Source: Gekko japonicus
Lineage: Eukaryota
Direction: 5' to 3'
Length of the DNA stretch: 64,000 nucleotides
Assembly (NCBI RefSeq): GCF_001447785.1
Contig: NW_015177030.1
Coordinates: forward strand, 408,053 to 472,052
The notes below the pieces were generated by a model. The model saw only the letters and a program-made list of their open reading frames with translations. It searched no databases and was not told the origin of the DNA. Below, piece after piece: positions 402 through 63,734 of the stretch. Position numbers and translations under genes: made by a program. The stretch's first letter is position 1. Every line of letters starts with the position of its first letter.

Positions 402-16361
<15,960 letters not shown>

Positions 16362-28345: not shown

Positions 28346-28917
28346 NNNNNNNNNNNNNNNNNNNNNNNNNNNNNNNNNNNNNNNNNNNNNNNNNNNNNNN
28401 NNNNNNNNNNNNNNNNNNNNNNNNNNNNNNNNNNNNNNNNNNNNNNNNNNNNNNNNNNNNNNNNNNNNNNNNNNNNNNNNNNNNNNNNNNNNNNNNNNNN
28501 NNNNNNNNNNNNNNNNNNNNNNNNNNNNNNNNNNNNNNNNNNNNNNNNNNNNNNNNNNNNNNNNNNNNNNNNNNNNNNNNNNNNNNNNNNNNNNNNNNNN
28601 NNNNNNNNNNNNNNNNNNNNNNNNNNNNNNNNNNNNNNNNNNNNNNNNNNNNNNNNNNNNNNNNNNNNNNNNNNNNNNNNNNNNNNNNNNNNNNNNNNNN
28701 NNNNNNNNNNNNNNNNNNNNNNNNNNNNNNNNNNNNNNNNNNNNNNNNNNNNNNNNNNNNNNNNNNNNNNNNNNNNNNNNNNNNNNNNNNNNNNNNNNNN
28801 NNNNNNNNNNNNNNNNNNNNNNNNNNNNNNNNNNNNNNNNNNNNNNNNNNNNNNNNNNNNNNNNNNNNNNNNNNNNNNNNNNNNNNNNNNNNNNNNNNNN
28901 NNNNNNNNNNNNNNNNN
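28346..28917. other. Assembly gap (others: 40947-40975, 53404-54000, 56686-57604, 63568-63646)
   Basis: Runs of N, flanked by G/C-rich sequence. Confidence 0.99.
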
Positions 28918-29640
28918 GGGGGGGGCGGCCGAGCGGGTGGGCCGGGGGAGCGGCGAGGCGGCGGAGCGTGCGTCACGCGCGGAGAAGGGGCGGCCGCCGG
29001 CGCATGCGCAGTGCCGGGAGAGCGCCTGAGGGGCGAAGGTTGGCGCTGATGGCGGCCGCCGGGTCCGGAGCGAGGAAGCCCGGCTCCCCGCGGGACTCGG
29101 AGTCGGAGGTCTGGTCCCGCCGCGTGAGGGAGCTGGTCGGCGCGGAGCCCGCCAACCGGCTGTGCTTCGAGTGCGGCCAGCGCGGCGTCACCTACGTCGA
29201 CATCACCATCGGCAGCTTCGTCTGCACCGGCTGCTCGGGGGCGCTGTGAGTGCGGGAGGGGCGGGCCCTCCGTCTCGTCCCCGTGTCTTCTCCCGCGGGG
29301 CCTGGGTGCACGTGTGGACGGTGCCAGCCCTGCGACCCCGCGTTGGCCTCCCCGCCGCGGGAGGGAGGGAGGGAGGGAGCCGCGGCCCAAGGTCACCCTC
29401 TGCAAACAGCGCAGCCCGACGAGGGCCCCTCTCCAGCCCAGCAGTCTGCTGCACCACAGCCAAGGCGCGGGGCCCAGAGGCCGCCTCCCCGCAAGCACCG
29501 TTACTCAGGGGGGGGGAGGGGGCGCCTTTCCTCAGTCACCCATCGCGCGGGTCGCGAGAAAGGCACGGGAGCCTCAACCAGCAGCGCGGATCTGCACCCG
29601 GGAAAGCTCCTGCCGCAGGAAACGTGCTAGTTTTCAGGGC
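28918..29640 (+). promoter_or_regulatory. AGFG2 CpG-island promoter
   Basis: CpG-dense; CRE-like TGCGTCA near 28969, GC box near 28987, NRF1 motif GCGCATGCGC at 29000-29009, all just upstream of ATG 29049. Confidence 0.75.
29049..29245 (+). CDS. AGFG2: AGFG2 exon 1 (ArfGAP zinc finger)
   Basis: ANRLCFECGQRGVTYVDITIGSFVCTGCSGAL; donor CT|gtgagt. Confidence 0.93.
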
Positions 29641-39256: not shown

Positions 39257-42232
39257 CAGCAGCAGCAGACGTTGGAGGAGATGCTGCCCCCCCCCTTTGC
39301 CTCTGTCTGTGGGAGCTCCCCCTGCCGGGCACGCACTTTAGTCTGTCTGTCGCCATCTCTGCCTGGGTGGGGGTGAAGTGCTTTAACGACTGGCTGTTGA
39401 AGAGAGGGCCTGCCTCAAAGCAGTGCATGATGGGACTTGCAATGGAAGCTGGGGGGCTTGCTGGGAATCCAGCAGCAATGCGTGCTGGGAGGTTGATGGC
39501 AGGGAGGGAAGGGACAGGCTCAATACAAGCACTTTAAGAGCGGCTGGAGAGGCTCCCCCCTGCAGTGCATGCTGGGATGTGATGTCAAGGTTGAGGCCGT
39601 TGCAGTGCTTGCTGGGAAAAGGGAACTCTCTTTGGAGTCTGAGTCTGCTCCAATCTCGGAGCTTCCTCTCCAGCCGCCCCCTTGCCGGTCTCCCAGCAGC
39701 CCTTGCTGTTGGCACTGCCGGATTGCCAAGGGCCAAGGTTCAGTCTTCTGCTGGGCCTCCCCCAAGGCCTCTAGCAGTGGGATCCCTTTGCTTATCTGCT
39801 TTCTGGTTCTCCTGCCCCCAGTGAATTCCATCGTGTGGGTTTGTAGCCAGAGAGAGGCTTCCAGGCGCTCTGGATGGAGTGAGAAGAAGCCACGGTGCCG
39901 ACATGGGGCGGGAGGGTTCTTGCCTTGATCGTCCACGCCATCCCCTCATTTCTCTCAGTCATTGCACTAACTAAAAGGGACTCGGGCAGTTGCATCCTGG
40001 CAAGAGTCTCCGCAGCGCCCCTGCACCACGCATGCCTGCCGAGGAGGCAAGGAGCAGTAACACTGAGGGAGGCCCAGTGTCCCAGCCTGCTGCCTGGGGT
40101 GGGTGGGAGGCCAGGGTCTGCACGGACCCTGAAGCAGGGCGCCGTGGTCCCTGTTGCTGCCCCAGCAAGCTTGCACTGGCCCTGGTCTCTATGCCACCGC
40201 ACCAGGGAGGGTTTGACTGGCACGTGCTTGGACAGATGTGCCCTGCCCCCACCTCCCGCTTCTGGGCAAAACTCACAAGGGTGTAAAACTGGAGCCCACA
40301 GGGGCCCCCTCCTCCAGCCTTGCCCCACTTAATTTCTCCCTCTACCGTGTGGCCTGACACTGTGCCAGGAAGGGGGTCCACCGCGTCACGGCCCCCTTGG
40401 GAAGCTCCCTGAGTAAGCCGGGGTGGGGGTGGGGAGAGGGCTCCTTCCTCCAGCCTCCCACCTTGGTCAGAACGGCCCCTCTCCTCCGACGTTGCCTCCT
40501 GCAGTATTCTGTGTCCCCCCCCCCAGCTCACCAGAACCTTCCCTCGGGGGCCTCTGTCCACGCAAACAGTGCCTCTTGGATCCAGTGGTCGGAAGCTGAG
40601 GTTCTGGCACTCAGCAGCCAGTCTTGGCCTGCGATGTCACAGAAGCTGAGCAAGCTTCACTTTGGCTGACTTAATTTCTACTTGACTAAAAGCAGGGATT
40701 TATGCAGCAGAAGTGGGTGCAAAAGCTCTTATTAAACGTTAGGGGCTTTGCACAGAAAGCGGGGGATTTCATAAGAAACTTGTGAGTGGTTATTTGGGGG
40801 GGGTGCTTTAATTTGCTGCACCCCCCTCCTTCTCCTCCTCCTCCTGCCCCCATGCCTTTCCTCGCTTCTCCCCAGGGGGCTCCTGTCCGAGGCCCTCTCC
40901 CTTCCCAGCCTCTCCTCTGGGCGGGGCTTGTTTTTGTAACACCCCTNNNNNNNNNNNNNNNNNNNNNNNNNNNNNATGCGGAGGCGGTGGTGGGTGCACG
41001 CAAGGGGGGGGGGGGGGGGGGGGGGGGGGAACAGCTTGGCTGCCTGCTCCTGTTTAAAAGGTGTCCAGTTTGGTGTCCGCTGAGGCTCCCCCAAGGGAGA
41101 AAGGCTGGGGTGCAGAGGACTGCCCGTGGAAAGGTTGGCGTGGGAAGCCCTTGTCTGCCTCAGTGCCCAGAAAGCTCCCTGTGCCTGCATTGCTCACCTG
41201 GCAGAAGGTGTGGCTGCTGTGCTTCCCCAAACCTTGCTCCCTGCACCACCACCACCCCGTGCGTATGGGATGCCTCCCTCTGCTTCTCTTGGGTTAAGAA
41301 CATAAGAGACGCCAATGTTGGATCAAGCCAAAGGCCCATCCAGCCCAACACTCTGTGTCACACAGTGGCCAGAAATCTTTCCGAGGGGAGAGCCAACATC
41401 CTGCGACTTGCAGGCCCACCCCCTGAACTGCTCCATCCCAGCCCCCTTTCCCAGGGGCCTTTTGTGTGCCCAGGAGGGGGGGGTCTTATCTTCAGGCTAG
41501 CCCTTTGTGGCCTACTCAGAGACCCCCTCCCATTGCCAGCCTCCAGGTGGAACCTGGAATTCTGGAATTCCAGTTTTTATCCAGTGGTACCTTTAAGACC
41601 AGGAAGGTTCAATTCTGGGGATCAGCTTTCGTGAGCATTTCCGGACTACAGAGATTGGTTTCCATTGAGGAAAAGTGCAGACTCTGGGAATACCAGGCAG
41701 CCTAGGAGAAAATGAGGTCCTGGAGTGGTATCGCATCTCCGCTAAACTTCCTCCCCAAACTCGCTTTCCCCAGGCAAACCCCCCCTCCCCCCAAAAAAAG
41801 CCTCCAGGCTTTTCCCACACTTGAACTGGCAGCCCTCAACCCCCAGATCCTGGTTGGAGGGCCCCTCCCTAGCTCAGCCCCGTCACAGCAACGGGGTTTC
41901 TCCCCGTGCAGAGATGTTTCCGTCCTGCAGCCCTGCCGTCCTTGTGGTGGCTTAGCAGGGACCACAGAAAGCCCCGGGAGGAAAGGGAGGAGAAGTCCCT
42001 GCACAGCGCACATGCTTGGGCTACCTGGTTTCGGCAAGACCTGCAATGCAGCCTCCCTTCCTTCTGAAAGGCTGACGTACATCCACACGTGCTTTCCCTC
42101 CACGCCACGCCCCAACCCTGCTTGGCCCTGACATGTAGGGTTCCCACTCCACCCCTTGCTGAGACCTCAGAATCAGACGTGGAAAGGGTGGGTGGGGGGA
42201 CACTGTATTGCAAGACGTGTTGTCCACGTGGG

Positions 42233-42323
42233 TCAGTTGGCGCTGCTGTCGCCCAGGCGCAAAGGGGAGGCGGAGAACGCAAGCCCAGCCAGGATCCCGG
42301 AGACGTGGCCAGTGACGGAGCTC
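42233..42323 (-). CDS. Rhomboid coding exon C (catalytic His, stop)
   Basis: ctctctccccctttttcttacag-type acceptor, then SSVTGHVSGILAGLAFSASPLRLGDSSAN TGA. Confidence 0.85.
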
Positions 42324-43387
42324 CTGTAAGAAAAGGGGGAGAGAGACACGGGCATCAGCAGCTCCCCTCTGGCATTGCTCGCTTGCCTTTAGGATGTCCC
42401 ACGCACACCCCTCCCCCCCCCCACAACAAAGGGCCCAGGGGAGGCGTGGGCCAGGCCTTTGTCCTGGGAATAGCACCTGCCTCTGAGCAGGTCCAGACTG
42501 CATCCCAGTTCTGGTTTCCTCAAAAGGGCAGGAGTTTCCCAACTTGGGCCGGGCCTACCTGGGGTGGATGACGGCAAGCAGGAGGCATTCCAGGATGCAC
42601 AGCCACCTGGTCGTCAAGGCGACGCCGCTGGCCAGCGTGGCCACTGGGAAGGGCTCCACCTGCCGGCCCATGGCTTCCAGCGAGAAGAGGACCCCTGCGT
42701 GCGGGACCAGAGGGAGGCGGGGCTAGCACGAGCAGCAGGGGAGGTGGGCGTGGAGGCCTGGGGGGGTGGCCAGCTCCAGGCAGAGGTGTTCCTGGAGATC
42801 TGGGGGTGTGGCTGCCTGGGGAGGGTGGAGTCTGGGCAGGAGGACCCCAATCCCATCGAGCGCACGCTGCAAAGCGGCCGTGTTTCCCGGGGAGCCGATC
42901 GCTCTCATCTGGCGATCAGCTGGCAGGCCCCACCTGGAGGCTGGCACCCCTCGCAGACGGTTCGGCCTCCGCTCTCCACGTGAGGGGGCGTGGAGAGAGA
43001 GAGAGGCGCCAGGCCAGGACGAACCGCACCTGAGAATCCCACGGCGCAGTGTTCCCAGTACCACTGTTGCCCGGTGACCGCGGCCAGCGTGGCGTTGAGC
43101 ACCAGGTGCAGCAGCCCACCCAGCAGCGCCAGGAGGAGCAGAACGGTGCCCGTCCGTAGGCTGCCCACCTCCTGCTCCATCCGCCAGCCCAGCCAGACGA
43201 GGGTGGCCATGTTCATCAGCAGGTGGCCCGTGCTCAGGTGGTGGAAAGGTGCCAGGAGCAGCCGGTGCCACTGGCCCCGCTCCCACACGGTCTGCACGCT
43301 CAGGCAGGAGCCTCCGGGGGTCCGGATCGGGTGCCAGAAGAGGGCCCCGTTCAGGGCCACCAGGGCCAGAGTGGCCCAGGGCACCAT
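42233..43387 (-). CDS. RHBDD1/RHBDL4-like rhomboid intramembrane serine protease (putative paralog); complement(join(42233..42323,42559..42694,43030..43387)), >=194 aa
   Basis: WHRLLLAPFHHLSTGHLLMNM (L1/TM2 motif), CAVGFSG|VLF (catalytic Ser), TGHVSGILAG (catalytic His). Both introns are GT-AG with good pyrimidine tracts and correct phases (1, 2). Start codon uncertain. Confidence 0.88.
42559..42694 (-). CDS. Rhomboid coding exon B
   Basis: acgcag|GVLFSLEAMG...RWLCILECLLLAVIHP AG|gtaggc. Confidence 0.85.
43030..43387 (-). CDS. Rhomboid coding exon A
   Basis: MVPWATLALVALN...SCLSV...EHCAVGFS; donor G|gtgcgg. Confidence 0.88.
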
Positions 43388-44964
43388 GGGGGCAGCCTGC
43401 CCCCGGGGGAGGGTGTGGGGCAGGAGGAGGAGGGGGGCCTCTCTGTGACCTCAGGGCTGATGCCGGCTCTCACCTCTGACCTCCCCTGCCCCACCCCAGA
43501 GGAGGGCTCCTGCCTGCCTGGCTGCCTGCCCAAGAGGCCGGGTCTTCTTTCCCGGGACTGGGCGACGGCAGAGGGCCTCGGCAGCTCAGTTTCGTCTCTG
43601 CGCTGAGGAGGGCCGGAGGACTGGATTTCCTTTACCCACTGGCTCATGGCCACCTCTCTCTCTGTGGGATCCAGGAATCCCTTTGGATTCCATCGGGAGC
43701 CAGTCTTGGGAGCTGTTCAGAATGAACGCCAGAGCCCACTAGCCAGGCACAGATTCCTCGGGTGTGGGTGATTTCTTTTTGAGACACGTGGGGTGTGTGT
43801 GTGTGTGTGAAATATATGCAATGTTTGCTTTTCTGTCAGACCTAAACTGATTTTACTGTTTTAAAAGTATTAAATGTGTAACGTCAAGATGGGTAGCCAG
43901 ATTAGTCTGCGGCAGGAGCAAGGAGTCCAGCAGCACCTTAGAGACAAACCAGGTCTGTGGCAGGGGAGGCGCTCTCGGAGTCACGTGGCTCCCTTCTTCA
44001 GATACTCTGTGCCCGTTACGCCGCCCACTGTGCCACGCTCGCTGCCTGCCCGCCCGTGAGGTGCTCAGCCACTGGACCTCAGACCCTCTGCCGGTGGCAC
44101 TCCGTTTTTCAAAGAGAAGCCTGCGCTGCTTAAGCCACTGGTCTTGGGGGGATGTCGGGGTTTTTGAAGCCCTGGATTCCATAGCGCTGCGGAACAACAT
44201 CTCCTCCCAGGATGCCGTGTGACCCGTGAGCCCGTGTGGAAGGCTCCCTGTGTCAGTCAGGGGCTGGGAGTGGGGCCGCCAGCTGGAGATTGGGGGGAAC
44301 AGCCTGGAAAAGGAGGGGAGGGGCTTCAGAGGTGACTTAACGCCCTAGACTCCACCCTCCCAGGCAGCCATTTCCTCCAGGGGAAGGGATCTCTGGAGTC
44401 TGGCGATCAGCTGCAATTCCAAGAGGACTTCAGGCCTCACCTGGTAGTTGGTGCCCCCCCCCACAAGAGAACGGAATGCAGAGACGGGCCTTTACTTTGG
44501 GGGGTGGGGTGGGAAAGCCGAGGGACCCGGGGGTGGGCCGGTCAGTGACAGTAGGCGGTGTCCGGTTGAGGTTCCTCAGGGAAGGTCCTGCCAGTGAAAC
44601 TTCCAGCATCGGAGCCTGTTCCCCTCCCTCTCTGGCGTGGACGCCCCCCATGCCTTCTCAAAGCGACCCTTGGGACAGCCCTGCGAGGGAGGCCGACAGC
44701 ACCACCCTTGCCGGAGGAGTTCGGGGCAGAGGCCTCTTGAGTCACAGCTCAGGGCTTTGGCGAAAGCGGCAACCATCCCCAGCTGCCATCTGGACATCTT
44801 GGAAAACCCAAACCAGGCTTGGAAGCCGCAACGGCCCCTCCTGCTTCTGGAGTCTCCCAGCTTTTGGCCCATAGAGGTAGACTGTCTCTGCAGACAGAGG
44901 TTCTGCCCAGGATAATGATGACCATCGACAGGTTTTCTCACCTGTGAGTTCCATTGATGTATGT

Positions 44965-52399: not shown

Positions 52400-54300
52400 C
52401 TGTCTGGAGCAGAAGAGGGGCCGTCTCAAGACTAACCAGATTGGGGGGGGGCGCCGGGCGGGGAGGAGCTTCCCTGAGTCGCTGCGGCCTTCTGCGGAGG
52501 ATGCAGCCAGAACGCGATAGAAGGGCCGATGGACTCCCCTTCCAGCTGTATCTGATGAAGTGAGCAGCGCCTGAATGAAGCTCCCCCCTTTCCGCCGCCC
52601 ACGTGGTTGGTCTGGAAGCGGCTGCCGGGAAATTCACCACGTGCGAGCGAGTGAGGGGGGGGCTGCTGGGTAGAGACAGAGGAGACGCACGAGGCCGATG
52701 CCCCGGATTCGTCTCCCGCATGCGTTCCCACGCACTCACAAACACGCAACAGCCGCGGTCGCTGAAGCTGATTCGGCGGCGGCAGCAACGGGGCAGGCAA
52801 GGGCTGCGCCAAGGGTTGCCAGCTGACCTTGGGAAAACGCCCCGTCCCTCTTAACAAAGGCTCGACGGGGGCTTGGTGCTGTTCAGGCCCGGGAGGTGAA
52901 CGGCGTCTCCTTCAAGGGGCGGGCCATTTTTTCTCCCGCCAGTTGGCATCCTCAGACGAAGGGGCAAGCGGGAGGCCCCCCCCTCCTCCACGTCTGTCGA
53001 GCTGGCTTGGAGGTGTTGGCCTAGGGGTGTCAGCTCCGGGGTTGCAAATTCCGGGAGATTTGGCAGTGGAGCCTGCCCGGGGAGGCGACGGTCGTTAGCA
53101 GGGCGTCACGGTCACGCCCTCGAGTCCGCCCTCCGTCTCCCGGCTCCTCCTGGAGGTTGGCAGCTCCCTCGGCTCCCCTCCGGCGCAAGACTGCCTGCCT
53201 TCGGCCTCCAGCCCCGGAGGCGGGTCCCGTGCAGACCGCCCCACCTGGGTAGGCGCAGGGCGCGGGTGGCGGCGGCGGCTCCCTCCCGTCCCCCGACACG
53301 TGTCACCGACGCCGTGCGTACCAAACGCGCGCCCAATCGGGCGCTAGGGCTGCGGCGGCGCGGTTGCGGCAGGGGCCTATAAAGGCGGCGCGGGAGGGAG
53401 GGGNNNNNNNNNNNNNNNNNNNNNNNNNNNNNNNNNNNNNNNNNNNNNNNNNNNNNNNNNNNNNNNNNNNNNNNNNNNNNNNNNNNNNNNNNNNNNNNNN
53501 NNNNNNNNNNNNNNNNNNNNNNNNNNNNNNNNNNNNNNNNNNNNNNNNNNNNNNNNNNNNNNNNNNNNNNNNNNNNNNNNNNNNNNNNNNNNNNNNNNNN
53601 NNNNNNNNNNNNNNNNNNNNNNNNNNNNNNNNNNNNNNNNNNNNNNNNNNNNNNNNNNNNNNNNNNNNNNNNNNNNNNNNNNNNNNNNNNNNNNNNNNNN
53701 NNNNNNNNNNNNNNNNNNNNNNNNNNNNNNNNNNNNNNNNNNNNNNNNNNNNNNNNNNNNNNNNNNNNNNNNNNNNNNNNNNNNNNNNNNNNNNNNNNNN
53801 NNNNNNNNNNNNNNNNNNNNNNNNNNNNNNNNNNNNNNNNNNNNNNNNNNNNNNNNNNNNNNNNNNNNNNNNNNNNNNNNNNNNNNNNNNNNNNNNNNNN
53901 NNNNNNNNNNNNNNNNNNNNNNNNNNNNNNNNNNNNNNNNNNNNNNNNNNNNNNNNNNNNNNNNNNNNNNNNNNNNNNNNNNNNNNNNNNNNNNNNNNNN
54001 GGGAGCCGGGGTGGCCGCCTGCGGCCGGGGTGGGGGGCCGGAGTGGCCCGCTGCGGGGGGAGCCCCGGCTGACTGTGGACTCCGGACACTCGTGGGCCGT
54101 CGGGAAGGACTGAACGGGAGCGCTTTGGTCCAGTGAGGCCCGGCCGGGAGCAGTCCAGGATATTCCTCCCACCTCCGGGGAAGCTTTGGGTGCCCGGGCA
54201 GTCGCCAGATTCGAGGCTTGGTGGGCCCCCGTGCTCCAGAGGGGTGCAAAGTTTTTGTCTAGCGCCCCCTCCTCCTAATCTGAGCCAGGTCCCGATGGAT
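52400..54300. promoter_or_regulatory. CpG island and IRS3 core promoter (possibly bidirectional)
   Basis: Palindromic E-box gaCACGTGtc at 53295-53304, CCAAT at 53333-53337, TATAAA at 53378-53383; the likely TSS falls at or in the N-gap 53404-54000. Confidence 0.7.
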
Positions 54301-54643
54301 GCCGAGGGACCCCCTCTTTTCTTGGACGTCCGCCTGTGCGGCTACTTGCGGAAACAGAAGTCCCAGCACCGGCGCTACTTCGTGCTCCGCGGCGCCAGCT
54401 CCAGTGGGCCCGCTCGCCTGGAGTACTACGAAAGTGAGAAGAAGTTCCGGGCCGGGGGGCCGGGCTCACGCCCTAAGAGGGCCTTCCCCTTGGCCAAGGC
54501 ACTGAGCATCAGCAAGCGGGCAGATGCCCGCCACAGACACCTCCTGGTCCTGTGCGGGCGAGAGGGCACCTTTGGCGTGGCGGCCGAGAACGCCGAACAG
54601 CAGCAGGCGTGGTACGCAGCTCTGGTGGAACTCCACGGCAAGG
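54295..54643 (+). CDS. IRS3: IRS3 exon 1 (PH domain)
   Basis: First ATG after the in-frame TGA at 54070; donor G|gtgagt, phase 1. Confidence 0.88.
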
Positions 54644-57600
54644 GTGAGTGGAGCCCCCTCCTGATGAACAGCTCGCTCGCAGAGGTCCATCCCCCACCCC
54701 ACCCCCGGCCAGACTTGGAGGCTGGGTGAGGAGCCCTGCTTGTCTGGGGAGGTGCTTAGAGAGCAGTTACCTAACTGCTGTTCTCAGGGAGAGGAGGACA
54801 CGGTTTGAATTTTCTGCCTCTGGTGGCTCCTGGTTCCCCCCTGGACAGTGATGGGCCCCCCTTCCCTTTGGGCATGTGGCTACAGGGGCTGTGGGGCCTG
54901 CCCTGGGGGCATTGGGGTTAGATTACTGCCATGCTTGCTTCTATGTGGGGCTGCTTTTGAAGCCTGCCTGGAGGCAGCCTGGGGTGGGTCGTGGGGACCA
55001 CATCTCTTCCTCCGGTCTTTATTCCCTCTCCACTGGCTTCCTGTCTGTTCTCCAGGCTCAGTTCCAGGTGCTGCTGGCATTGACGTCTTGAGCCCCATGC
55101 AGCCGGGGACCTCCACCCCAGGGCCAGGCCTCTCTGCTTACCAGATGATTGCTTGCCAGATGTGGGGGCTGCCCTGGGAATTTCGTGGTGGTGGTGGGGG
55201 GTAGAGTTGGCTGGACTCCTTCGGCTCTGCATCAGGCAGCCCCACCTGGGGCCCTCGTTTCTTGTCCCACCTGTCGGGCGACGACTAGGACAGAAAAAGC
55301 CAAATTCGGGATGCCAAACTTGGAACGTTTTGGAATACTTTTTGGTTTCAATACACTATTTTTTTTTTTGGTTCCTGGAGAATTGGGTGCCCGGCATTTC
55401 TGGCTCTTAATGTTGACGAATCTGACTTTCCTTCCTGCGTTTTCTGGAGGTTAAGCAGGCCCAGGTGGATTCTTTTAATTGGGTTCTGTTTGTTGTGTTT
55501 ACATAATAGGGTCGTAGGTTAAAGGGACCATTATCAGGATAGGCAATGGTGGGGAACCAAAATGCAGCACAGCCAACTTCCGCCCGAATGGATGGTCCAT
55601 ATCAAGTGGAATATCAATAAAGCTACTCCTTACCAAAAGAAACAGCCCGGAAGTTGTGTGACGGAGCCAGCTCCTGCACAGCGGATTGGGTCCCACATGT
55701 CCGTCCCACAGAGCCTTCCCCTGGCACAAGGAAGGGTTCTTGGGACTCACAACCTGTCCCCTGGCCTGTCTGACCTGACTCGCCTTCCCGGCACCCCTGT
55801 TCCTCAAGGCCCACGCCCTTTGCCGCACATCTCCACTCCAGCTTAGGTCTCTCCCTCCAACCCACCGTTTCTCTCGGTGCCCCTCTCCCTCGGTGGACAC
55901 ACAACGGGGGGGGGTCCTCTTGGTGCTCCAGCGATGGCTCCCCTGAGTAGTTAAGATTCTCCAGCGGGATGCTGGAGTGAAGCATCCTTTGACCCCGTGG
56001 GTCTTCTGGTGCGCATGCGCAGACTTCAGCGGGGCGGGGCTGATCCCTGCAGACGGTGGGCCTTCTTTTGGATTCAGCTGCTTGGGCCTGCTTTTGCTTC
56101 ATGAAGCGGAGGGCTCCTTCCGGCCTCCCCAATGAGCAAAGCTTTCTGTCTCTCCTGTACGGACGGATCATTTGCCCAAAGTACAGGCCAAGTGGGGGGG
56201 GGGTGTCATTTAGCTGATCTATTTGTTTAAACATTCATGAGCCGCCTTTTTTGCTTATGGAGCGCAAGGTGGCTGGCCGTATGAATAAAACAGGTACCCC
56301 GTGGAGTACCTAGAAACCAAAAACTTACATCAGACCGTCTCACAGACTGTCCCCCCCCCCCCCGCCCATCCTGGCAGGCGGGTGGCTTTGACCCAAGGAG
56401 GGAGGAGGGGGTCAGCCCCTCGTGGAGACGGAGGTGGCAGCTGCTGCGGGGTCTCGATCTCTTCTGTGCTGCGTCTTGGCCAGGGAGGGGGAGGCCCAGA
56501 GACGGAAGGCGAGACCCTCCCACTGACTCCCCCCCCAATCACCTGGCATGGAAAATATTGGGTGGGTTTTGGGGGTTTTTTTGGCTTTTGCTCACAGGCC
56601 GCGATTGCAGCTGTTTCTGGGCTGGAGCAGCTGCTTAGGGCAGCGTCTGTCTGTCGTTGAGGTGCCTGAAGTGACTCGGGAGGGGNNNNNNNNNNNNNNN
56701 NNNNNNNNNNNNNNNNNNNNNNNNNNNNNNNNNNNNNNNNNNNNNNNNNNNNNNNNNNNNNNNNNNNNNNNNNNNNNNNNNNNNNNNNNNNNNNNNNNNN
56801 NNNNNNNNNNNNNNNNNNNNNNNNNNNNNNNNNNNNNNNNNNNNNNNNNNNNNNNNNNNNNNNNNNNNNNNNNNNNNNNNNNNNNNNNNNNNNNNNNNNN
56901 NNNNNNNNNNNNNNNNNNNNNNNNNNNNNNNNNNNNNNNNNNNNNNNNNNNNNNNNNNNNNNNNNNNNNNNNNNNNNNNNNNNNNNNNNNNNNNNNNNNN
57001 NNNNNNNNNNNNNNNNNNNNNNNNNNNNNNNNNNNNNNNNNNNNNNNNNNNNNNNNNNNNNNNNNNNNNNNNNNNNNNNNNNNNNNNNNNNNNNNNNNNN
57101 NNNNNNNNNNNNNNNNNNNNNNNNNNNNNNNNNNNNNNNNNNNNNNNNNNNNNNNNNNNNNNNNNNNNNNNNNNNNNNNNNNNNNNNNNNNNNNNNNNNN
57201 NNNNNNNNNNNNNNNNNNNNNNNNNNNNNNNNNNNNNNNNNNNNNNNNNNNNNNNNNNNNNNNNNNNNNNNNNNNNNNNNNNNNNNNNNNNNNNNNNNNN
57301 NNNNNNNNNNNNNNNNNNNNNNNNNNNNNNNNNNNNNNNNNNNNNNNNNNNNNNNNNNNNNNNNNNNNNNNNNNNNNNNNNNNNNNNNNNNNNNNNNNNN
57401 NNNNNNNNNNNNNNNNNNNNNNNNNNNNNNNNNNNNNNNNNNNNNNNNNNNNNNNNNNNNNNNNNNNNNNNNNNNNNNNNNNNNNNNNNNNNNNNNNNNN
57501 NNNNNNNNNNNNNNNNNNNNNNNNNNNNNNNNNNNNNNNNNNNNNNNNNNNNNNNNNNNNNNNNNNNNNNNNNNNNNNNNNNNNNNNNNNNNNNNNNNNN

Positions 57601-60600
57601 NNNNCCCCCCGGGCAGGGGGTTCTGGGGGTATCCTCAGTGGAGCCCCCTCCTGGCCAGAGGTGGGCCTGCACTGCTGGGGCCTGTCCAGAAGGACGGCTG
57701 GGGGACCCCATCTGAGGTGCTGGTCTGGACCTCTGTGCTTCCTCACCTCTTGGGGCAGGCTGGGCACGGTGGGGCTGCCTTGGGGTCCTGGGGCCTGCCA
57801 GAGGAGGAGCAACCGAATTAAGCAGACCCCACCCCCCGCTGCATGGTTGGGGGGGGGAGTGAGAAGTCTTTGATATAAACCACTCATAAGAACATAAGAG
57901 AAGCCCATGTTGGATCAGGCCAATGGCCCCTCCAGTCCAACACTCTGTCCCACAGTGGCCTGAAATACCAGGGGCCATCAGGAGGTCCAGCAGTGGGGCC
58001 AGGACACTAGGAGCTCTCTCACTGTTGACCTCCCCTCCCAGGCACCAAGAATACAGAGCATCCCTTGCCCCAGACTGAGAGTTCCTGTCTATCCCTTGTG
58101 GCTCATAGCCACTGATGGACCTCTGCTCCATATGCTTATCTAATTCCCTCTTGAAGCCATCCGTGCTTGTAGCCTCCACCACCTCCTGTGGTAGTGAATT
58201 CCATGTGTGAATCACTCTTTGGGTGACGAAGGACTTCCTTTTATCCGTTCTAACCCGACCGCTCAGCGATTTCATGGAGTGCCCACAAGGAGTTCTTGTC
58301 TTGTGAGAAAGGGAGAAAAGTACTTCTTTCTCTACCTGCTCTATCCCATGCATAATCTTATAAACCTCGATCATGTCACCCCTCAGTCGTCTTTTCTCCA
58401 AGCTAAAGAGCCCCAAGCGCTTTAACCTTTCCTCATAGGGAAAGTGTTCCAACCCTTTGATCATTCGAGTTGCCCTTTTTGAGGTGTGGTGACCGGAACT
58501 GTACACAGTACTTCAAATGAGGTCACACCATTGATTTATCTAGGGGCATTATGATACTGGCCGATTTGTTTTCACTCCTCTGCCTTAGAGGCACCTGGGG
58601 ACATCCTTTGGGATTGCAGGGTCGTTCTGTCTCCCCTGGAGCTGGAGGGCCCCTCCCCCCCAGATTCCGCCCGGTCTTCCCCGGAAGAAGCCCGCTGAGG
58701 GAGGTGGCACTCCACAAAGTCACGGCTCCTTCCCCGTGTTCCCCGTCAAATAAACGCCTGGAGCAGTGATCGGTGTTCTTAGAAGAATATAGTGAAGCAG
58801 CGATTAAATCAGCAGAGTGAGGAGTGAGAGAGCCTGAGTTTGAAAAATAGAAAAAACTTTTCTAGAACTTAACCATGGGGGGGGGGGCGGTGAACAGGAT
58901 GCAAACAAGAAATGCCAGATTCCTACATCTTTACAGCGAGGGAGATTCTGTAGGAATGGCAACGTGTCTTCTCCACAAGGCAGTAAAAGAGACCCCAATA
59001 TATGCTAAACAATGCTCCCTCTAAGCTGTGGATTCCTGTGAGCAAAAGTTCTACTTGGTGAGCTCCTGGCGTTAAAGTTGTGAGCCAGCGATTTGGCTGC
59101 TGCGTAAATCAGTTTGCTCTGGAGTCACGTCCTTTCTGGGCTAAGACAAAAATGTGTGAGCCGGAGGCTAAAACACTGAGCCACCTCACACTAACTCAGC
59201 TTAGGGGGAACACTGGTGCTAAACAGCCAATACATTGATTTCCCTTCACAAAGCTACAGGGTCAGGTCCCTTTACTCATACCTCCGACAACAAATTCAGA
59301 GTCCAGTCAAGCACCTTTAAGACCAACAGAGGTTTATTCAAAGGATGAGCTTTGTGACTCACACAAAGTTACCGTAACTATAATTACTGAAGTGCTTTGA
59401 CTTGCTAAGCCCAACAAGCTGCCTTCTACCAAATCAGACCTCCTGTAGCTCGCCAGAGTCTTCCACAGCACCTGTGCCCCAATCCTTGACTGGAGATGCC
59501 ACCGGGGATTGAACTGAGGGCCTTCTGGGTGCCAAGCAGAGGCCCTGCCACTGAGCCACACGGCCCCCTCTCCCCAACCGCCTCCTGCTCAGGCGACGTT
59601 TCTCTTCTCTCCTCTTGCAGGGAAAGCATCCCCGGACGGAGATGGAGACCCGGCGCTCTCCGGCCCAGCGTTCAAGGAAGCCTGGCAGGTCAGCCTCCGT
59701 CCCAGAGGCCTGGGCCACACCAAGCGCCTGGCCGGCACCTACCTCCTCTGCCTGACCGACAAGACCATCAGCTTTGTGAAGCTGAACACGGACGTGGCCG
59801 CCGTGGTCCTGCAGCTGCTCAACGTCCGGCGCTGCGGCCACTCGGAGAACTACTTCTTCATGGAGGTGGGCCGCTCGGCGGTGACGGGCCCCGGGGAGCT
59901 CTGGATGCAGGTGGATGACCTGGTGGTGGCCCAGAACATGCACGAGACTATCCTGGAGGCCATGAAGGCCCTGAGCGAGGAGTTCCGCGTCCGCAGCAAG
60001 AGCCAGCCCCTGGCCTCCCCGCCCATCTCGGTGCCCCCTCGCCACCCGCCCCTCAGCACGCCCCCGCCCGGCCAGGCCGCTTTCCCCTGGAGACCCCGCC
60101 CCCCGGGGGCCTCCGCCGTGAGCAGGAGCCCCGGCCCCCCCGGGCAGAAGGGGGCCGGGCTGCAGAAGCCGGGTTCCTTGAGCGATTACAGCGTGGTCTC
60201 CTCGGACGAAGGGGGATCGAGCCCGGGCGACTCACGCCCGCCCAACACTCCCGACCGGCTGAGTGACCTGGTGCCCGAGGGGGAGCTGGACTACATTGCC
60301 ATGGGCAAGCGGGCTCTGCCGGACGGGCGCGGCTTGGCCGGGTGGGGGGTGGGGCCCAACAAGCGGGCCTCGCTGCCCCCCCTGGCCCTGGAGAAGGGCA
60401 GCCTGCCCCACCGGAAGCGGGCCCTCAAGCCGGTCGCCGCCTCGGCAAGTTACCCGGAGGGCCTCAACCGCAGCACCGACCCCAGCTACATGGCCATGCT
60501 TCCCGGCGTGGCCCGCAGTGCGGAGGGCCAGGCCTACATCCCGATGACCCCGAGCAGCGCCTCCCCTCCCCAGGAGAGCGGCGGGAGTGGGTGCTGGGCG

Positions 60601-63111
60601 GCGGGGGGGGTGGCTCCTTGGCCAGCGACTACGTGAACATGTCCCCCCTCAGCCGCTCGGCCTCCAGCACCCCGCCCGAGTACAGCCCCCTGCTGGCCCC
60701 TCCCGGCGCCGCGCCCTTCTACTCCCTGCCGCGCTCCTACAGGCGAGGGGGGAGGCCGCTCTCTTTCCCCTTCCACCCGGGGCGCCTCTCGAGCTCCTCG
60801 TCCACCAGCTCAGACAGCCTGGAGGAGTGGGTGGGCGCCCCGTGTTCGGCCCGTCCTCCTCCGAGGCTCCTGGTGGGGGGCAGAGCCACACCGGCCGCAC
60901 CCCGCAGCTCCGGCGAGTACATCAGCCTCGAATACGGCCCCCGAGCCCCCAGCTGTGTCCACTTGGAGCTCCAAGCCGTGCCGGCGGAGGTCAGCGAGGT
61001 GGCGGGGCCTCCTGGCGATGGTGCAGCGGTGCCGATGACCCGTCTGGTGCGAGCAGACGCCCCAGGGAGGCGACACCACGGACCGGAAGCCTTCCCTGAA
61101 GTGGAGCAGAACGGGGTGCAGCCCTGCGAGGCCGGGACTGAGCCAGGGCTGAACTATATTGACCTCGACCTGGTGAAGGAGGCCGGGGCGGAGGGGGGGC
61201 CCCCACTGCGTGCCGCTGCCGCCATCCCCAGCCAGGGCGGGGCCCTCCACACGTATGCCAGCATCGACTTCCACCGCCCGTGGGAGCTGCGTGGATGCCA
61301 GCCAGGCCCTGAGCAAGCCGGTGAGGGAGCAGGCCGGCACTTGAGCGGGGGAGACAGTGGGGGTTAGGGAGGGGAAGGAAGCTCTGGGCAGAGAGAAGAT
61401 CGGGCCGCCTGTTCTATGGCAAAGGAGACGCCTGTCTTCAGGGGTCATTTCCTAGAAAAAGAGGTGTAGGAGCTCATCTGCAGAACTCATTTGCATATGC
61501 CACACCCCCTGACAAAGGGCAGGCATGTTTAAAATGCAAAGGCAGAGAGGCGGGCGGGCTGGAGAAGGGGAGGGCAGGGAGGCAAACATGCCTTGCATTC
61601 AAACCCCCCCCCCCCCCGTTTCTCCACCAGCAGCCAGGAAAGGCCGGGGGTCGGGGCTCCTTACTGCCGGAGCGCCGCTCCGGGGTGCTCTAGCAGGAAA
61701 TGACCCCTGCCTGTCTTCCTGTCTTAAGTTTCACAACAGCCTTGCGAGGTAGGCTAATGAGGGAGGGGGCTGCTCTTCAGCTGTTGTCGAAGGAGGCCAC
61801 ACTGGCGAGTCTTTGGGCGTAGCCCTCTGAGTCAAACTGGGGACCCAAAATAACCTCTGCGATTGATGGGTGTCGTTTTGGGTGGTTACCGTGACCCCAA
61901 ATGCCACCCGAAGCTCTGTCTCCCCCCCTCCCAGCCCCAGGATTGTTCAGGCATCTCTTTTCCTGCTCTGGGGTGGGTTAGCCCCTTGACATTGTGGAAA
62001 TGGTGCACACCTTAAGTCACCGGTCCCCTAAATTTGTCGAAATCTGTACCGTGGCCCTGCCTGCGGTGGCCCCGGGGGTGTCTCTGGGCCGGATTTCTCT
62101 GGCTCTGCTAAAGAGTTGTCTTCCTGTTGCGCCTCCCCACCTGGCCACAGCCTGGTCTGGACCGCGAGTGGACCCTGTTCCTCTGTCCCCTTTCAACCAG
62201 GAAATGTTTTGTAACTTGAGGCAAGCTGCCCGTTTTCTGTGGGGTCTGCATTTCCACTTGGTGCCCACCCCACGGCGAACAAGAGTCCTCCCCTTCCTGG
62301 GCTTGGGCCTCCCTCCCAGCCAACTCTTCCCCTTTCCAGTCCTGCTTCAAGCTTCCTTCAAGAGCCAGTTTGGCGTCGTGGTTAAGTGTGCGGAGTCGGA
62401 CTCTAATCTGGGAGAACCGGGTTTGATTCCCCATTCCTCCACTTGCACCTGCTGGATGACCTTGTGCAAACCACAGTTCTCTCAGAGCTCTCTCAGCCCC
62501 ACCTGCCTCCCAGGTTGTCTGTTGTGGGGAGGGGAAGGGAGAGGAGTTTGCTCCCTAGTTCCGTTTTCCAGATGGGGAGGGGGGGTGCGTCAGGGATGCC
62601 TGAATCTGTTGGGGAAGGGGCCAGGCCCTTTCTCCCCCCTGTCTTTTCCGGCGCTCTCGCCCTCTTAGTTTGTAGCGGCGGAATCAGGAGTAGGGGCGAT
62701 GGCAGGACGCAGGCCTGTCCGGTGCCGCCGGACTCCTGGGCGCTTGTCCCAGGCCTCTAGCTTAGACATCTGCATCGAGTCCTCCCCCTTCCCCCCCCAT
62801 ATTTTTTGGGAGGCTTGTCCAGGGTGCGGGGGCCGATCCCTCCAAGGGTGCCACAGCAGGGCACGTGCTTTCTTCTGCGGCCTCTGGATCCGTTCTGCCT
62901 GCAGGGAGGTTCCGTCAGCCGTTTTGTTACATCTTGTGTCTGAATTGCGTTCCAGAAGGTGTGGAGGAGGAGGATGGGCTTGGTCCGCCAGTGTGCGCTC
63001 TTGGGCAGGATCCGTGGGTCTTTTCTGGAGCACCCTTTGAAAAGAGCTCCCCCCCCCCACCCTGAACTGAAACTGCTCCTTTTCCTTCTCTCTTTCATTC
63101 CAGAGTTGTGA
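54295..63111 (+). CDS. IRS3: Insulin receptor substrate 3; join(54295..54643,59621..61320,63104..63111) with an apparent 1-nt deletion near 60585-60612; ~685 aa if corrected
   Basis: PH domain [22 protein letters not shown]...[12 protein letters not shown] (IRS3-type); intron between PH and PTB as in rodent Irs3; IRS-type [38 protein letters not shown]; YxxM sites; LNYIDLDL; YASIDF. Syntenic with NYAP1/AGFG2. Confidence 0.88.
57886..58575 (-). mobile_element. CR1 LINE 3' end in IRS3 intron 1
   Basis: [42 protein letters not shown]; near-identical to the 21005-21550 copy. Confidence 0.9.
59010..59215 (-). mobile_element. hAT-type MITE family 1 (inverted copy)
   Basis: TIRs caatgctccctctaag / cttagggggaacactg; TSD atgctaaa/gtgctaaa. 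Confidence 0.82.
59621..61320 (+). CDS. IRS3: IRS3 exon 2 (PTB domain and tyrosine-motif tail; frameshift near 60600)
   Basis: Strong acceptor tctcttctctcctcttgcag|. ORFs 59776-60636 and 60342-61367 overlap and each carries IRS motifs. Donor CCG|gtgagg. Confidence 0.88.
61439..61709. mobile_element. hAT-type MITE family 3 in IRS3 intron 2
   Basis: TIRs caggggtcatttcct / aggaaatgacccctg; perfect 8-bp TSD cctgtctt at 61431-61438 and 61710-61717. Confidence 0.85.
63104..63111 (+). CDS. IRS3: IRS3 terminal coding mini-segment (E-L-stop), start of 3' UTR exon
   Basis: Long pyrimidine tract ...ctctttcattccag|AG TTG TGA; matches the phase-1 donor at 61320. Confidence 0.65.
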
Positions 63112-63734
63112 TGCCCCAGAAGCCGCCTCCGGAGAGACCCGGCTGGCCTCAGCTGCTCCTTGGCTGCCCCAGGGGGATTGGGGCCCCTCCTTCCCTCCCT
63201 CCTCCCTTCTCTCCCTGCGGCTGCCTGCCATGTGCCTTTTTTGGTGGGGAGGATAAAGCCCTTCCTGGACTCTGCCGGGGTCTCTCTCCCCCCCCACACA
63301 CCAAAGATGTGCTCTCTGTGTGTGCCCCCTCGTGCCTTGGCTGCCTGCCTGCCTGCCTGTGGGGTTGGGAGACTCCAGGTGAGCCCTCCCCCCAGGTTCC
63401 CCCCTCGAGTGCGGGCCTTGCTGCTCCGGCCCCGGCCCCAAAGAAGAGTGTGGGCCCTCTGTCCCCGGGTCTTGTTCACAAGCTGGCCCCTGTCTGCCCC
63501 CCCCCCCTCCACTGCCCCGGCTGAAGAGCCAGGGACTTCTTCCCCAGAGACTGGTGGGCCCTCCCCTNNNNNNNNNNNNNNNNNNNNNNNNNNNNNNNNN
63601 NNNNNNNNNNNNNNNNNNNNNNNNNNNNNNNNNNNNNNNNNNNNNNTGATTGAACACCCCCCCCCCCGCATGCAAACAGTCCCCTCCCTGTCTCTGGAAT
63701 TTGGAGTTGAACTACTTGGTTCCCGGTCCTGGGC

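What the first reader, a model, noticed from the sequence alone, without database searches (positions are those of the whole stretch)
42233..43450. Candidate RHBDD1/RHBDL4 paralog: a second rhomboid protease of this type, between AGFG2 and IRS3
Seen in sequence: three phase-compatible exons on the minus strand, only the first visible in the ORF track. They splice into a six-TM-type rhomboid with no internal stop and with WHR, HHxxxxHxxxN, GFSG (catalytic Ser) and GHVSG (catalytic His). Established, from memory: human RHBDD1 reads SCLSV...WQRLLLSPLHHADDWHLYFNM...CAVGFSGVLF...AGHLAGILVG, has introns at matching points, and sits beside IRS1, NYAP2 and AGFG1 on 2q36. I know of no rhomboid between AGFG2 and IRS3P on human 7q22. 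Inference: this is not a retrocopy, since it has introns, and not RHBDD1 itself, since its neighbours are the paralogs NYAP1/AGFG2/IRS3. It is most simply a whole-genome-duplication ohnolog kept in this reptile lineage and lost in mammals.
Basis: partly seen in the sequence, partly recalled or inferred. Interest (0 to 1): 0.92.

Follow-up and report, generated by a model that had tools for sequence, protein, structure and literature searches.

The report
Tail-less second RHBDD1-type rhomboid gene
This gecko window carries an intact three-exon gene for a very short rhomboid membrane protease, an old sister copy of RHBDD1/RHBDL4 that sits beside IRS3; databases name it automatically in reptiles, coelacanth, a caecilian and sharks, but I found no paper describing it.

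Summary
On the minus strand, three exons (43387-43030, 42694-42559, 42323-42233) with canonical GT/AG sites and phases 1 and 2 encode a stop-free 194-aa protein. It has every rhomboid catalytic motif.

The gene is neither RHBDD1 itself nor a recent copy:
- Geckos have a separate canonical RHBDD1 on another chromosome-scale contig.
- An AU test rejects grouping the reptile copy with sauropsid RHBDD1 (p = 0.0004).

Orthologs of 187-199 aa, auto-named "rhomboid-related protein 4-like", occur across squamates and turtles. Probable orthologs occur in a caecilian, coelacanth and many sharks and rays. Within squamates it is about as conserved as the RHBDD1 core, so it is under purifying selection.

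It lies in the order NYAP(+), AGFG(+), rhomboid(-), IRS(+), head-to-head with the IRS gene. In mouse, RHBDD1 is likewise drawn beside Irs1. The tree and this synteny favour an early vertebrate genome-duplication origin. AU tests cannot exclude a later duplication on the sarcopterygian stem.

The reptile protein is a bare six-helix core without the RHBDL4 cytoplasmic tail that carries ubiquitin and p97 binding.

It is a new member of a known kind, of moderate interest.

The parts
43030..43387 (-). Exon 1 (coding): Met1 to the first base of Gly120. Covers TM1, the L1 loop, TM2, TM3 and the start of TM4 with GFS119.
   Evidence: Pfam Rhomboid E = 4.3e-14; 88% to Gekko kuhli P0001 residues 1-119.
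42695..43029 (-). Intron 1 (335 nt, phase 1), GT...AG.
   Evidence: ORF calls on short genomic contigs of other squamates read on past GFSG into unrelated sequence, so the boundary is conserved.
42559..42694 (-). Exon 2: the rest of TM4, the L4/L5 region and TM5.
   Evidence: 42/44 identical to P0001 residues 121-164.
42324..42558 (-). Intron 2 (235 nt, phase 2), GT...AG with a strong pyrimidine tract.
42233..42323 (-). Exon 3 coding part: TM6 with G-H171-V-S-G and GxxxGxxxG, a 12-residue end, and stop TGA at 42235-42233.
   Evidence: 28/29 identical to P0001 residues 166-194.
43031..43033 (-). Codon of the predicted catalytic Ser119 (TCA) in GFSG.
   Evidence: Invariant in all 41 aligned rhomboids of this type, sponge to gecko.
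42305..42307 (-). Codon of the predicted catalytic His171 (CAC) in GHVSG.
   Evidence: Invariant column.
43211..43225 (-). TM2 H55xxxN59 (oxyanion-hole residues of rhomboids).
   Evidence: Invariant columns H55 and N59.
43262..43270 (-). L1-loop W40-H-R42 (the rhomboid WR motif).
   Evidence: Invariant columns W40 and R42.
43451..43453 (-). In-frame TGA 21 codons upstream of the ATG. It bounds the N-terminus within exon 1.
12783..14393 (+). Neighbour: large NYAP-type coding exon.
   Evidence: Pfam NYAP_N E = 2.5e-57.
28968..29246 (+). Neighbour: first coding exon of an AGFG-type ArfGAP (CX2CX16CX2C zinc finger at 29163-29234).
   Evidence: Pfam ArfGap E = 2.2e-09.
54133..54729 (+). Neighbour: IRS-type gene, exon with the PH domain. 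About 11 kb from the rhomboid ATG, head-to-head.
   Evidence: Pfam PH E = 3.7e-08.
59776..61367 (+). Neighbour: IRS-type gene, PTB domain end and YxxM-rich tail, read in two frames.
   Evidence: Pfam IRS PTB E = 1.5e-15. ORFs.

Best explanation
The locus is a functional protein-coding gene for a minimal six-transmembrane rhomboid intramembrane serine protease. It is the gecko ortholog of the proteins that NCBI names 'rhomboid-related protein 4-like'.

It is an ancient paralog of RHBDD1/RHBDL4. Most probably it is the copy left by an early vertebrate whole-genome duplication in the NYAP1-AGFG2-IRS3 block, the counterpart of RHBDD1 beside IRS1.

Shown here:
- The exon structure.
- The rhomboid fold, on the 91%-identical Gekko kuhli ortholog.
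- Invariant Ser119/His171 and H55/N59.
- Conservation across squamates at the same level as the RHBDD1 core.
- A separate canonical RHBDD1 in geckos.

Inferred:
- It cuts membrane-protein substrates within or near the bilayer using the Ser-His dyad.
- Both termini are only a few residues long and the RHBDL4 cytoplasmic tail is absent. It therefore probably acts without direct ubiquitin recognition or p97 recruitment.
- It would then be a constitutive or differently targeted protease, perhaps in the early secretory pathway like RHBDL4.
For: Gene model and fold:
- Gene model.
- Pfam Rhomboid: and for the full-length ortholog (E = 8.9e-18, profile positions 1-137 of 143).
- The exons are colinear with ten independent squamate gene models of 187-196 aa.
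- AlphaFold2 model of ortholog P0001: pLDDT 88.8, pTM 0.82, six long helices.
- Foldseek best matches are GlpG rhomboid proteases, probability 1.0, TM 0.55-0.67.
- Catalytic and structural motifs are invariant across 41 sequences.

Constraint:
- Squamate 'like'-to-'like' identity is about equal to the RHBDD1 core for the same species pairs. Examples are 87.4 vs 86.0, 79.8 vs 81.4 and 76.3 vs 76.7.

Paralogy and age:
- Canonical RHBDD1 lies on different contigs in the same species.
- In the ML tree the 'like' clade has support 95/87 and its internal topology matches the species tree. The canonical clade has 93/94.
- The 'like' clade survives removal of the reptile rows (93/91).
- A recent sauropsid duplication is rejected (AU p = 0.0004).

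Synteny:
- NYAP_N, ArfGap and IRS PH/PTB domains flank the gene.
- In mouse, Rhbdd1 and Nyap2 are drawn beside Irs1, and Agfg2 and Nyap1 beside Irs3 (PMC5482937).

Tail:
- The reptile protein ends about 23 residues after the GH motif, with no UIM-like or VBM-like motif. Such motifs are readily seen in canonical and lamprey sequences.
- The RHBDL4 C terminus mediates p97 and ubiquitin binding (PMC6663880).
Against: - There is no transcript evidence.
- No codon-level dN/dS could be computed, because no orthologous DNA could be fetched.
- AU tests do not reject sharks' 'like' plus canonical as one clade (p = 0.229).
- AU tests do not reject sarcopterygian 'like' plus sarcopterygian canonical as one clade (p = 0.151).
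- 'Like' branches are long, the tree tool warns that long branches meet, and no derived residue unites all 'like' proteins against canonical ones.
- Only a weak poly(A)-like hexamer (AATACA) follows the stop.
- Protease activity, localisation and substrates are untested.
Confidence: 0.75

Rival explanations
1. It is a real conserved gene, but it arose by a later small-scale or segmental duplication of RHBDD1. An example would be the sarcopterygian stem, with an independent duplication in cartilaginous fishes. The grouping of all 'like' proteins would then be long-branch attraction.
For: - AU tests do not reject these topologies (p = 0.229; p = 0.151).
- Long-branch warnings.
- No shared derived residues across all 'like' proteins.
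Against: - The gene lies directly beside the IRS paralog in a block that also holds NYAP and AGFG paralogs (PMC5482937). A random insertion would not be expected to land there.
- 'Like' and canonical genes are on different large contigs in geckos, a caecilian, sharks and a ray.
- The best tree recovers one 'like' clade with species-tree order.
Confidence: 0.17
2. It is a decaying or non-proteolytic relic. That is, a pseudogene, or a rhomboid-fold protein that no longer cleaves and works as a scaffold or a partner of RHBDL4.
For: - No RNA evidence was obtained.
- Both cytoplasmic ends have been lost.
- Evolution was faster than RHBDD1 on deep branches. Turtle vs squamate identity is 53-58%, against 74-78% for RHBDD1.
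- The TM6 GxxxG motifs that could support oligomers are kept.
Against: - The reading frame is intact with the same three exons in at least ten squamates and several turtles.
- Ser, His, HxxxN and WR are invariant.
- Within-squamate conservation equals the RHBDD1 core.
- Known pseudoproteases (iRhoms, derlins) have lost the catalytic residues, from general knowledge of the family.
Confidence: 0.06
3. It is RHBDD1 itself, relocated, or a retrocopy of it.
For: None beyond family resemblance.
Against: - A canonical RHBDD1 exists in four gecko species. In Heteronotia and Paroedura, which also have the 'like' gene, the two lie on different contigs.
- Identity to it is 36%.
- The gene has two introns.
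- AU p = 0.0004 against a sauropsid-level origin.
Confidence: 0.02

Closest known systems
RHBDD1 / RHBDL4 (rhomboid-related protein 4), the ER-resident vertebrate rhomboid protease
   Same: - It is the nearest characterised relative by sequence and tree.
- Same six-helix core, with gap-free alignment of exon 1 to RHBDD1 residues 27-144.
- Same catalytic motifs.
- Probably the same two intron positions.
- Same kind of neighbour, an IRS gene (PMC5482937).
   Different: - Only 37-40% identical to RHBDD1 of the same reptile species.
- Lacks the roughly 25-residue N-terminal segment.
- Lacks the whole cytoplasmic tail of about 100 residues, which carries the acidic LxxAxxxS (UIM-like) and RRxRLxRF (VBM-like) motifs.
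- That tail mediates ubiquitin and p97 binding in RHBDL4 (PMC6663880).
- HHADDWHLYFNM becomes HHLSxxHLLxNM, and the WKG after TM2 becomes WLG.
NCBI 'rhomboid-related protein 4-like' models of squamates and turtles (for example Heteronotia binoei, Paroedura picta, Sceloporus undulatus, Chrysemys picta)
   Same: Orthologs. They have the same length (187-199 aa), the same start (M-x-P-W-A-T-L in squamates), the same exon junctions and 60-88% identity.
   Different: None of substance. These are automatic predictions with no described function. The window adds one more species.
Bacterial GlpG-type rhomboid core
   Same: Six-helix core of about 180-195 residues, with Ser on TM4 and His on TM6. It is the best structural match.
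   Different: About 20% identity. GlpG has an extra N-terminal cytoplasmic domain. There is no orthology.
Cartilaginous-fish 'rhomboid-related protein 4-like' (254-347 aa)
   Same: - They group with the reptile gene in the best tree.
- They coexist with canonical RHBDD1 on other contigs.
   Different: - They keep the N-terminal hydrophobic segment.
- They keep a short tail that in several species ends in a conserved R-R-Q-R-R-R-C-type motif.
- Orthology is not secured.

Membership tests
Rhomboid proteases (Pfam PF01694, MEROPS S54) | Significant match to the rhomboid domain profile | tested here: met
   - Exon 1: E = 4.3e-14, 53.4 bits against a cutoff of 22.6.
- Full-length ortholog P0001: E = 8.9e-18 over profile positions 1-137 of 143.
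Rhomboid proteases (Pfam PF01694, MEROPS S54) | Six-transmembrane-helix rhomboid fold | tested here: met
   - AF2 on ortholog P0001 (177 of 194 residues identical to the window's three exon peptides): pLDDT 88.8, with helices at 4-18, 53-74, 76-105, 119-128, 148-162 and 168-183.
- Foldseek top hits are GlpG, probability 1.0.
- The joined window model itself was not folded.
Rhomboid proteases (Pfam PF01694, MEROPS S54) | Catalytic Ser in GxSG on TM4 and catalytic His on TM6, plus TM2 HxxxN and the L1 WR motif | tested here: met
   GFS119G, GH171, H55xxxN59 and W40xR42 are read in the window. They are invariant in a 41-sequence alignment.
Rhomboid proteases (Pfam PF01694, MEROPS S54) | Intramembrane proteolytic activity | not testable with these tools
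   Needs a cleavage assay with wild-type and Ser119Ala protein.
RHBDD1/RHBDL4 subfamily | Closest relatives are RHBDD1 proteins, within the vertebrate RHBDD1 radiation | tested here: met
   The vertebrate node holding the lamprey, 'like' and canonical clades has support 96/95. All best non-'like' hits are RHBDD1.
RHBDD1/RHBDL4 subfamily | Orthology to RHBDD1 proper | tested here: not met
   - Separate clade.
- AU p = 0.0004 against grouping with sauropsid RHBDD1.
- Both genes occur in the same gecko species.
RHBDD1/RHBDL4 subfamily | Cytoplasmic C-terminal tail with a ubiquitin-interacting motif and a p97-binding VBM | tested here: not met
   - The window protein ends 23 residues after the GH motif.
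- No UIM-like or VBM-like pattern was found in reptile, turtle or coelacanth 'like' proteins.
- These patterns are present in several canonical and lamprey sequences.
RHBDD1/RHBDL4 subfamily | Shared intron positions with RHBDD1 | tested here: inconclusive
   - The evidence is indirect only.
- RHBDD1-derived truncated or read-through proteins diverge right after GFSG (P0026, P0030, P0036, P0051).
- Others diverge after (T/S/N)PG (P0022, P0027, P0028).
- These points match the window's two junctions.
- No RHBDD1 genomic DNA was available.
Ohnolog from the early vertebrate genome duplications | Lies in a block of paralogous genes matching the block around its paralog | tested here: met
   - The window holds NYAP, AGFG, rhomboid and IRS genes.
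- Mouse Irs1 is drawn with Rhbdd1, Col4a4 and Nyap2.
- Mouse Irs3 is drawn with Agfg2, Nyap1 and Lrch4 (PMC5482937).
- Naming the window's neighbours as the '1/2/3' paralogs rests on this arrangement, not on a tree.
Ohnolog from the early vertebrate genome duplications | Duplication node older than the split of cartilaginous and bony vertebrates | tested here: inconclusive
   The best tree says yes (95/87; 93/91). AU tests do not reject later duplications (p = 0.229; p = 0.151).
Ohnolog from the early vertebrate genome duplications | Conserved synteny of the 'like' gene in sharks, coelacanth, caecilian and turtles | not tested
The only evidence is that 'like' and canonical genes sit on different large contigs.

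The most novel reading that the evidence does not exclude
Jawed vertebrates ancestrally had two RHBDL4-type rhomboid proteases from the early genome duplications. The second, beside IRS3, survives from sharks to squamates as a progressively stripped-down enzyme. In reptiles it is a bare catalytic core with no ubiquitin- or p97-binding tail, and it was lost in mammals and probably birds. On this reading it is an undescribed active vertebrate rhomboid lineage that works independently of the ERAD ubiquitin/p97 machinery. It also supplies the missing IRS-rhomboid gene pair showing that the IRS3 locus is a genome-duplication counterpart of the IRS1 locus.
Probability: 0.5. Interest if true: 0.6.

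Novelty: new member of a known kind. Interest (0 to 1): 0.45.

Why it matters
- Accounts of vertebrate rhomboids centre on the mammalian set. Here is a conserved extra RHBDL4-type gene in many non-mammalian vertebrates. Six literature searches found no description of it.
- The reptile protein is a natural 'core-only' version of RHBDL4. Comparing the two could separate what the catalytic core does from what the ubiquitin/p97-binding tail adds (PMC6663880).
- The 2017 study of the Irs family left open whether Irs3 arose by genome duplication, because its mouse neighbourhood lacks the collagen IV pair (PMC5482937). An RHBDD1 paralog head-to-head with IRS3, next to NYAP and AGFG paralogs, is direct synteny evidence for a shared origin of the IRS1 and IRS3 loci.
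- Ohnologs lost in mammals are common, so this is a useful but not startling addition.

Tried and rejected
- **The look-up of encoding contigs was closed.** I could get no neighbouring genes for the turtle, caecilian, coelacanth or shark genes, and no orthologous DNA for dN/dS. Protein identity against RHBDD1 for the same species pairs served as a substitute.
- Read laying could therefore not be used, and there is no RNA junction evidence.
- **Logan-derived proteins are not spliced mRNAs.** P0004, P0005, P0007, P0011 and P0012 read through into intron 1. They give no splicing evidence.
- **PDB sequence search with exon 1 found nothing at E up to 1.** The fold search did work.
- **Supplements of two ohnolog papers are not held.**
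- **The Conger conger 'like' protein is an eel-lineage duplicate of canonical RHBDD1, not an ortholog.**
- **I looked for diagnostic residues uniting all 'like' proteins.** I found only two, and both are ancestral states.
- **Absence from other lineages is not firm.** No 'like' protein from birds, crocodilians, mammals, frogs, salamanders or ray-finned fishes appeared. But one search scored only 8000 candidates and dropped even some of its own query members.
Exons were searched by reference, and ortholog P0001 stood in for full-length analyses.
- **No human sequence was used.**
- **Relocated-ortholog and retrocopy readings are rejected**.
Full report
**Observation**

The minus strand of 42233-43387 holds three exons.
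- Exon 1 runs from the ATG at 43387 to 43030, followed by GTGCGG.
- Exon 2 is 42694-42559. It is preceded by a pyrimidine tract and CAG, and followed by GTAGGC.
- Exon 3 is 42323-42233. It is preceded by TTTTCTTACAG and ends in TGA.
- The phases are 1 and 2. The split codons give Gly120 and Arg165, and no exon has a stop.
- An in-frame TGA lies 21 codons upstream of the ATG.
- GC at third codon positions is 0.86-0.91, against 0.45-0.62 at second positions.

Each exon was searched by reference. The Gekko kuhli ortholog P0001 served as the full-length stand-in.

**Is it real?**

- Exon 1 alone matches Pfam Rhomboid at E = 4.3e-14.
- Exon 1 finds fifteen squamate proteins, including named NCBI and UniProt models from ten species. 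The named ones are 187-196 aa long and start the same way. The rest are short ORF calls on genomic contigs.
- The best hit is Gekko kuhli at 88% identity, so the window comes from a gecko close to Gekko.
- Exons 2 and 3 match residues 121-164 (42/44) and 166-194 (28/29) of that protein. Independent gene models therefore use the same junctions.
- An AlphaFold2 model of P0001 is confident (pLDDT 88.8, pTM 0.82) and has six long helices. Ser119 is at the start of helix 4 and His171 is in helix 6.
- Its best structural matches are GlpG rhomboid proteases at probability 1.0.
- In a 41-sequence alignment from sponge to gecko, W40, R42, H50, H55, N59, G117, S119, G170, H171, G174 and G178 are invariant.

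**What it is**

An exhaustive HMMER search and cluster look-ups found short 'rhomboid-related protein 4-like' proteins in several lineages:
- turtles (199 aa, 60% identity),
- coelacanth,
- the caecilian Rhinatrema,
- many sharks and rays.

The same species also carry a canonical RHBDD1 of about 300-316 aa on a different large contig. Examples are the geckos Heteronotia and Paroedura, and Sceloporus, Hemicordylus, Rhinatrema, Heptranchias and Narcine; Pristiophorus also has both proteins, with no contig on record. Window exon 1 is 36% identical, without gaps, to residues 27-144 of gecko RHBDD1.

A 60-row maximum-likelihood tree (LG+C20) gives these groupings:
- a 'like' clade (support 95/87),
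- a canonical clade (93/94),
- lamprey apart from both, inside a vertebrate node (96/95).

Within the 'like' clade the order is sharks, coelacanth, caecilian, then turtles plus squamates. That is the species tree. Removing the reptile rows leaves the remaining 'like' proteins together (93/91).

**Limits of the tree**

- The AU test firmly rejects a sauropsid-level duplication (p = 0.0004).
- It does not reject sharks' 'like' plus canonical as one clade (p = 0.229).
- It does not reject sarcopterygian 'like' plus sarcopterygian canonical as one clade (p = 0.151).
- 'Like' branches are long, the tool warns that long branches meet, and I found no derived residue shared by all 'like' proteins.
- Sequence alone therefore shows an old paralog. 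It only favours a duplication before the jawed-vertebrate radiation.

**Synteny**

The window holds four genes in this order:
- a NYAP exon on the plus strand (12783-14393; NYAP_N E = 2.5e-57);
- the first exon of an AGFG-type ArfGAP on the plus strand (28968-29246);
- the rhomboid on the minus strand;
- an IRS gene on the plus strand, with a PH domain in 54133-54729 and a PTB domain plus YxxM tail in 59776-61367.

The rhomboid and the IRS gene are head-to-head, about 11 kb apart.

In mouse, the Irs gene-family study draws Rhbdd1, Col4a4 and Nyap2 beside Irs1, and Agfg2, Nyap1 and Lrch4 beside Irs3. It leaves open whether Irs3 arose by genome duplication (PMC5482937). An RHBDD1 paralog beside the IRS paralog, in a block with NYAP and AGFG paralogs, is what a genome-duplication copy should look like. 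It is hard to explain by a stray insertion. This is the main support for the ohnolog reading.

**Constraint**

No orthologous DNA could be fetched, so there is no dN/dS. As a substitute I compared protein identity for the same species pairs. Within squamates the 'like' protein is about as conserved as the first 215 residues of RHBDD1:

| Species pair | 'Like' identity (%) | RHBDD1 core identity (%) |
|---|---|---|
| Heteronotia-Paroedura | 87.4 | 86.0 |
| Heteronotia-Hemicordylus | 79.8 | 81.4 |
| Heteronotia-Podarcis | 76.3 | 76.7 |

The frame, the three exons and the catalytic residues are intact in every species seen. That argues strongly against a pseudogene. On deeper branches it changed faster than RHBDD1: turtle vs squamate identity is 53-58%, against 74-78%.

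**Mechanism**

- Shown: a rhomboid fold with a complete Ser-His dyad and oxyanion residues.
- Inferred: it is an active intramembrane serine protease.
- It differs from RHBDL4 at the ends. The reptile protein starts at the first transmembrane helix and stops about 12 residues after the sixth.
[quoted passage not shown] Canonical and lamprey sequences show the acidic LxxAxxxS and RRxRLxRF-type motifs. Reptile, turtle and coelacanth 'like' proteins have none.
- The paralog therefore probably cleaves without direct ubiquitin or p97 coupling.
- Shark and ray 'like' proteins keep a short tail that in several species ends in a conserved arginine-rich motif (RRQRRRC type). This may be a remnant of the p97-binding motif.
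- Localisation and substrates are unknown.

**Intron positions**

I had no RHBDD1 genomic DNA. However, several truncated or read-through RHBDD1 proteins in the databases diverge exactly after GFSG, or after the (S/T/N)PG before the GH motif. These are the window's two junctions.

**Novelty**

The orthologs are already predicted by NCBI. Six literature searches found no paper on a second RHBDD1-type gene. The only paper naming IRS3 and RHBDD1 together does not mention one.

No 'like' protein from birds, crocodilians, mammals, frogs, salamanders or ray-finned fishes appeared. The eel 'like' protein is a duplicate of canonical RHBDD1. This absence is weak evidence, because one search scored only part of the candidates. 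Bird assemblies are reported to lack Irs3 and its flanking genes Agfg2 and Lrch4 (PMC5482937).

**Not done**

- dN/dS.
- Synteny outside the window.
- A search of this genome for RHBDD1.
- No human sequence was used, and no contig was taken for human.

**Verdict**

The genome-duplication origin is likely but unproven. It is a new member of a known kind, of moderate interest.

Noticed in passing
window 60342-60636, G8 run at about 60603-60610: The IRS-type coding sequence is plausible in one frame up to about 60575 (AYIPMT...) and in another from about 60612 (DYVNMSP...). The switch falls in a G-rich stretch with a run of eight G. It may be an assembly length error or a real frameshift.
   Followed up: partly
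window 54133-54729 and 59776-61367: The IRS gene here has its PH domain and its PTB/tail on ORFs 5 kb apart. An N run (56686-57604) and a repeat-like ORF lie between them, so it appears to have an intron, unlike the single-coding-exon picture I recall for mammalian IRS genes. Its total length looks closer to the 662-aa snake Irs3 listed in PMC5482937 than to IRS1, IRS2 or IRS4.
   Followed up: partly
window 57997-58506, minus strand: This open frame resembles, from memory, the C-terminal end of a CR1-type LINE ORF2 (…[20 protein letters not shown]…). Pfam gave no hit.
   Followed up: partly
window 28346-28917, 40947-40975, 53404-54000, 56686-57604, 63568-63646: These are runs of N. The first lies directly upstream of the AGFG first exon.
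   Followed up: no
proteins P0174, P0175, P0178-P0180 (shark and ray 'like' proteins): They share a conserved C-terminal arginine-rich end (R-R-Q-R-R/K-R-C/Y), reminiscent of the RRxRLxRF end of canonical RHBDD1. No UIM-like motif is present.
   Followed up: partly
protein P0045 (Conger conger 'rhomboid-related protein 4-like'): Despite the name, it groups with Anguilla canonical RHBDD1 (100/99). It is an eel-lineage duplicate with a full tail, not an ortholog of the window gene.
   Followed up: yes
window 42209, minus strand: Only a weak poly(A)-like hexamer (AATACA, 23 nt after the stop) was found within 1.2 kb downstream (41000-42232). No AATAAA or ATTAAA is present, so the 3' end of the transcript is undefined.
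   Followed up: no
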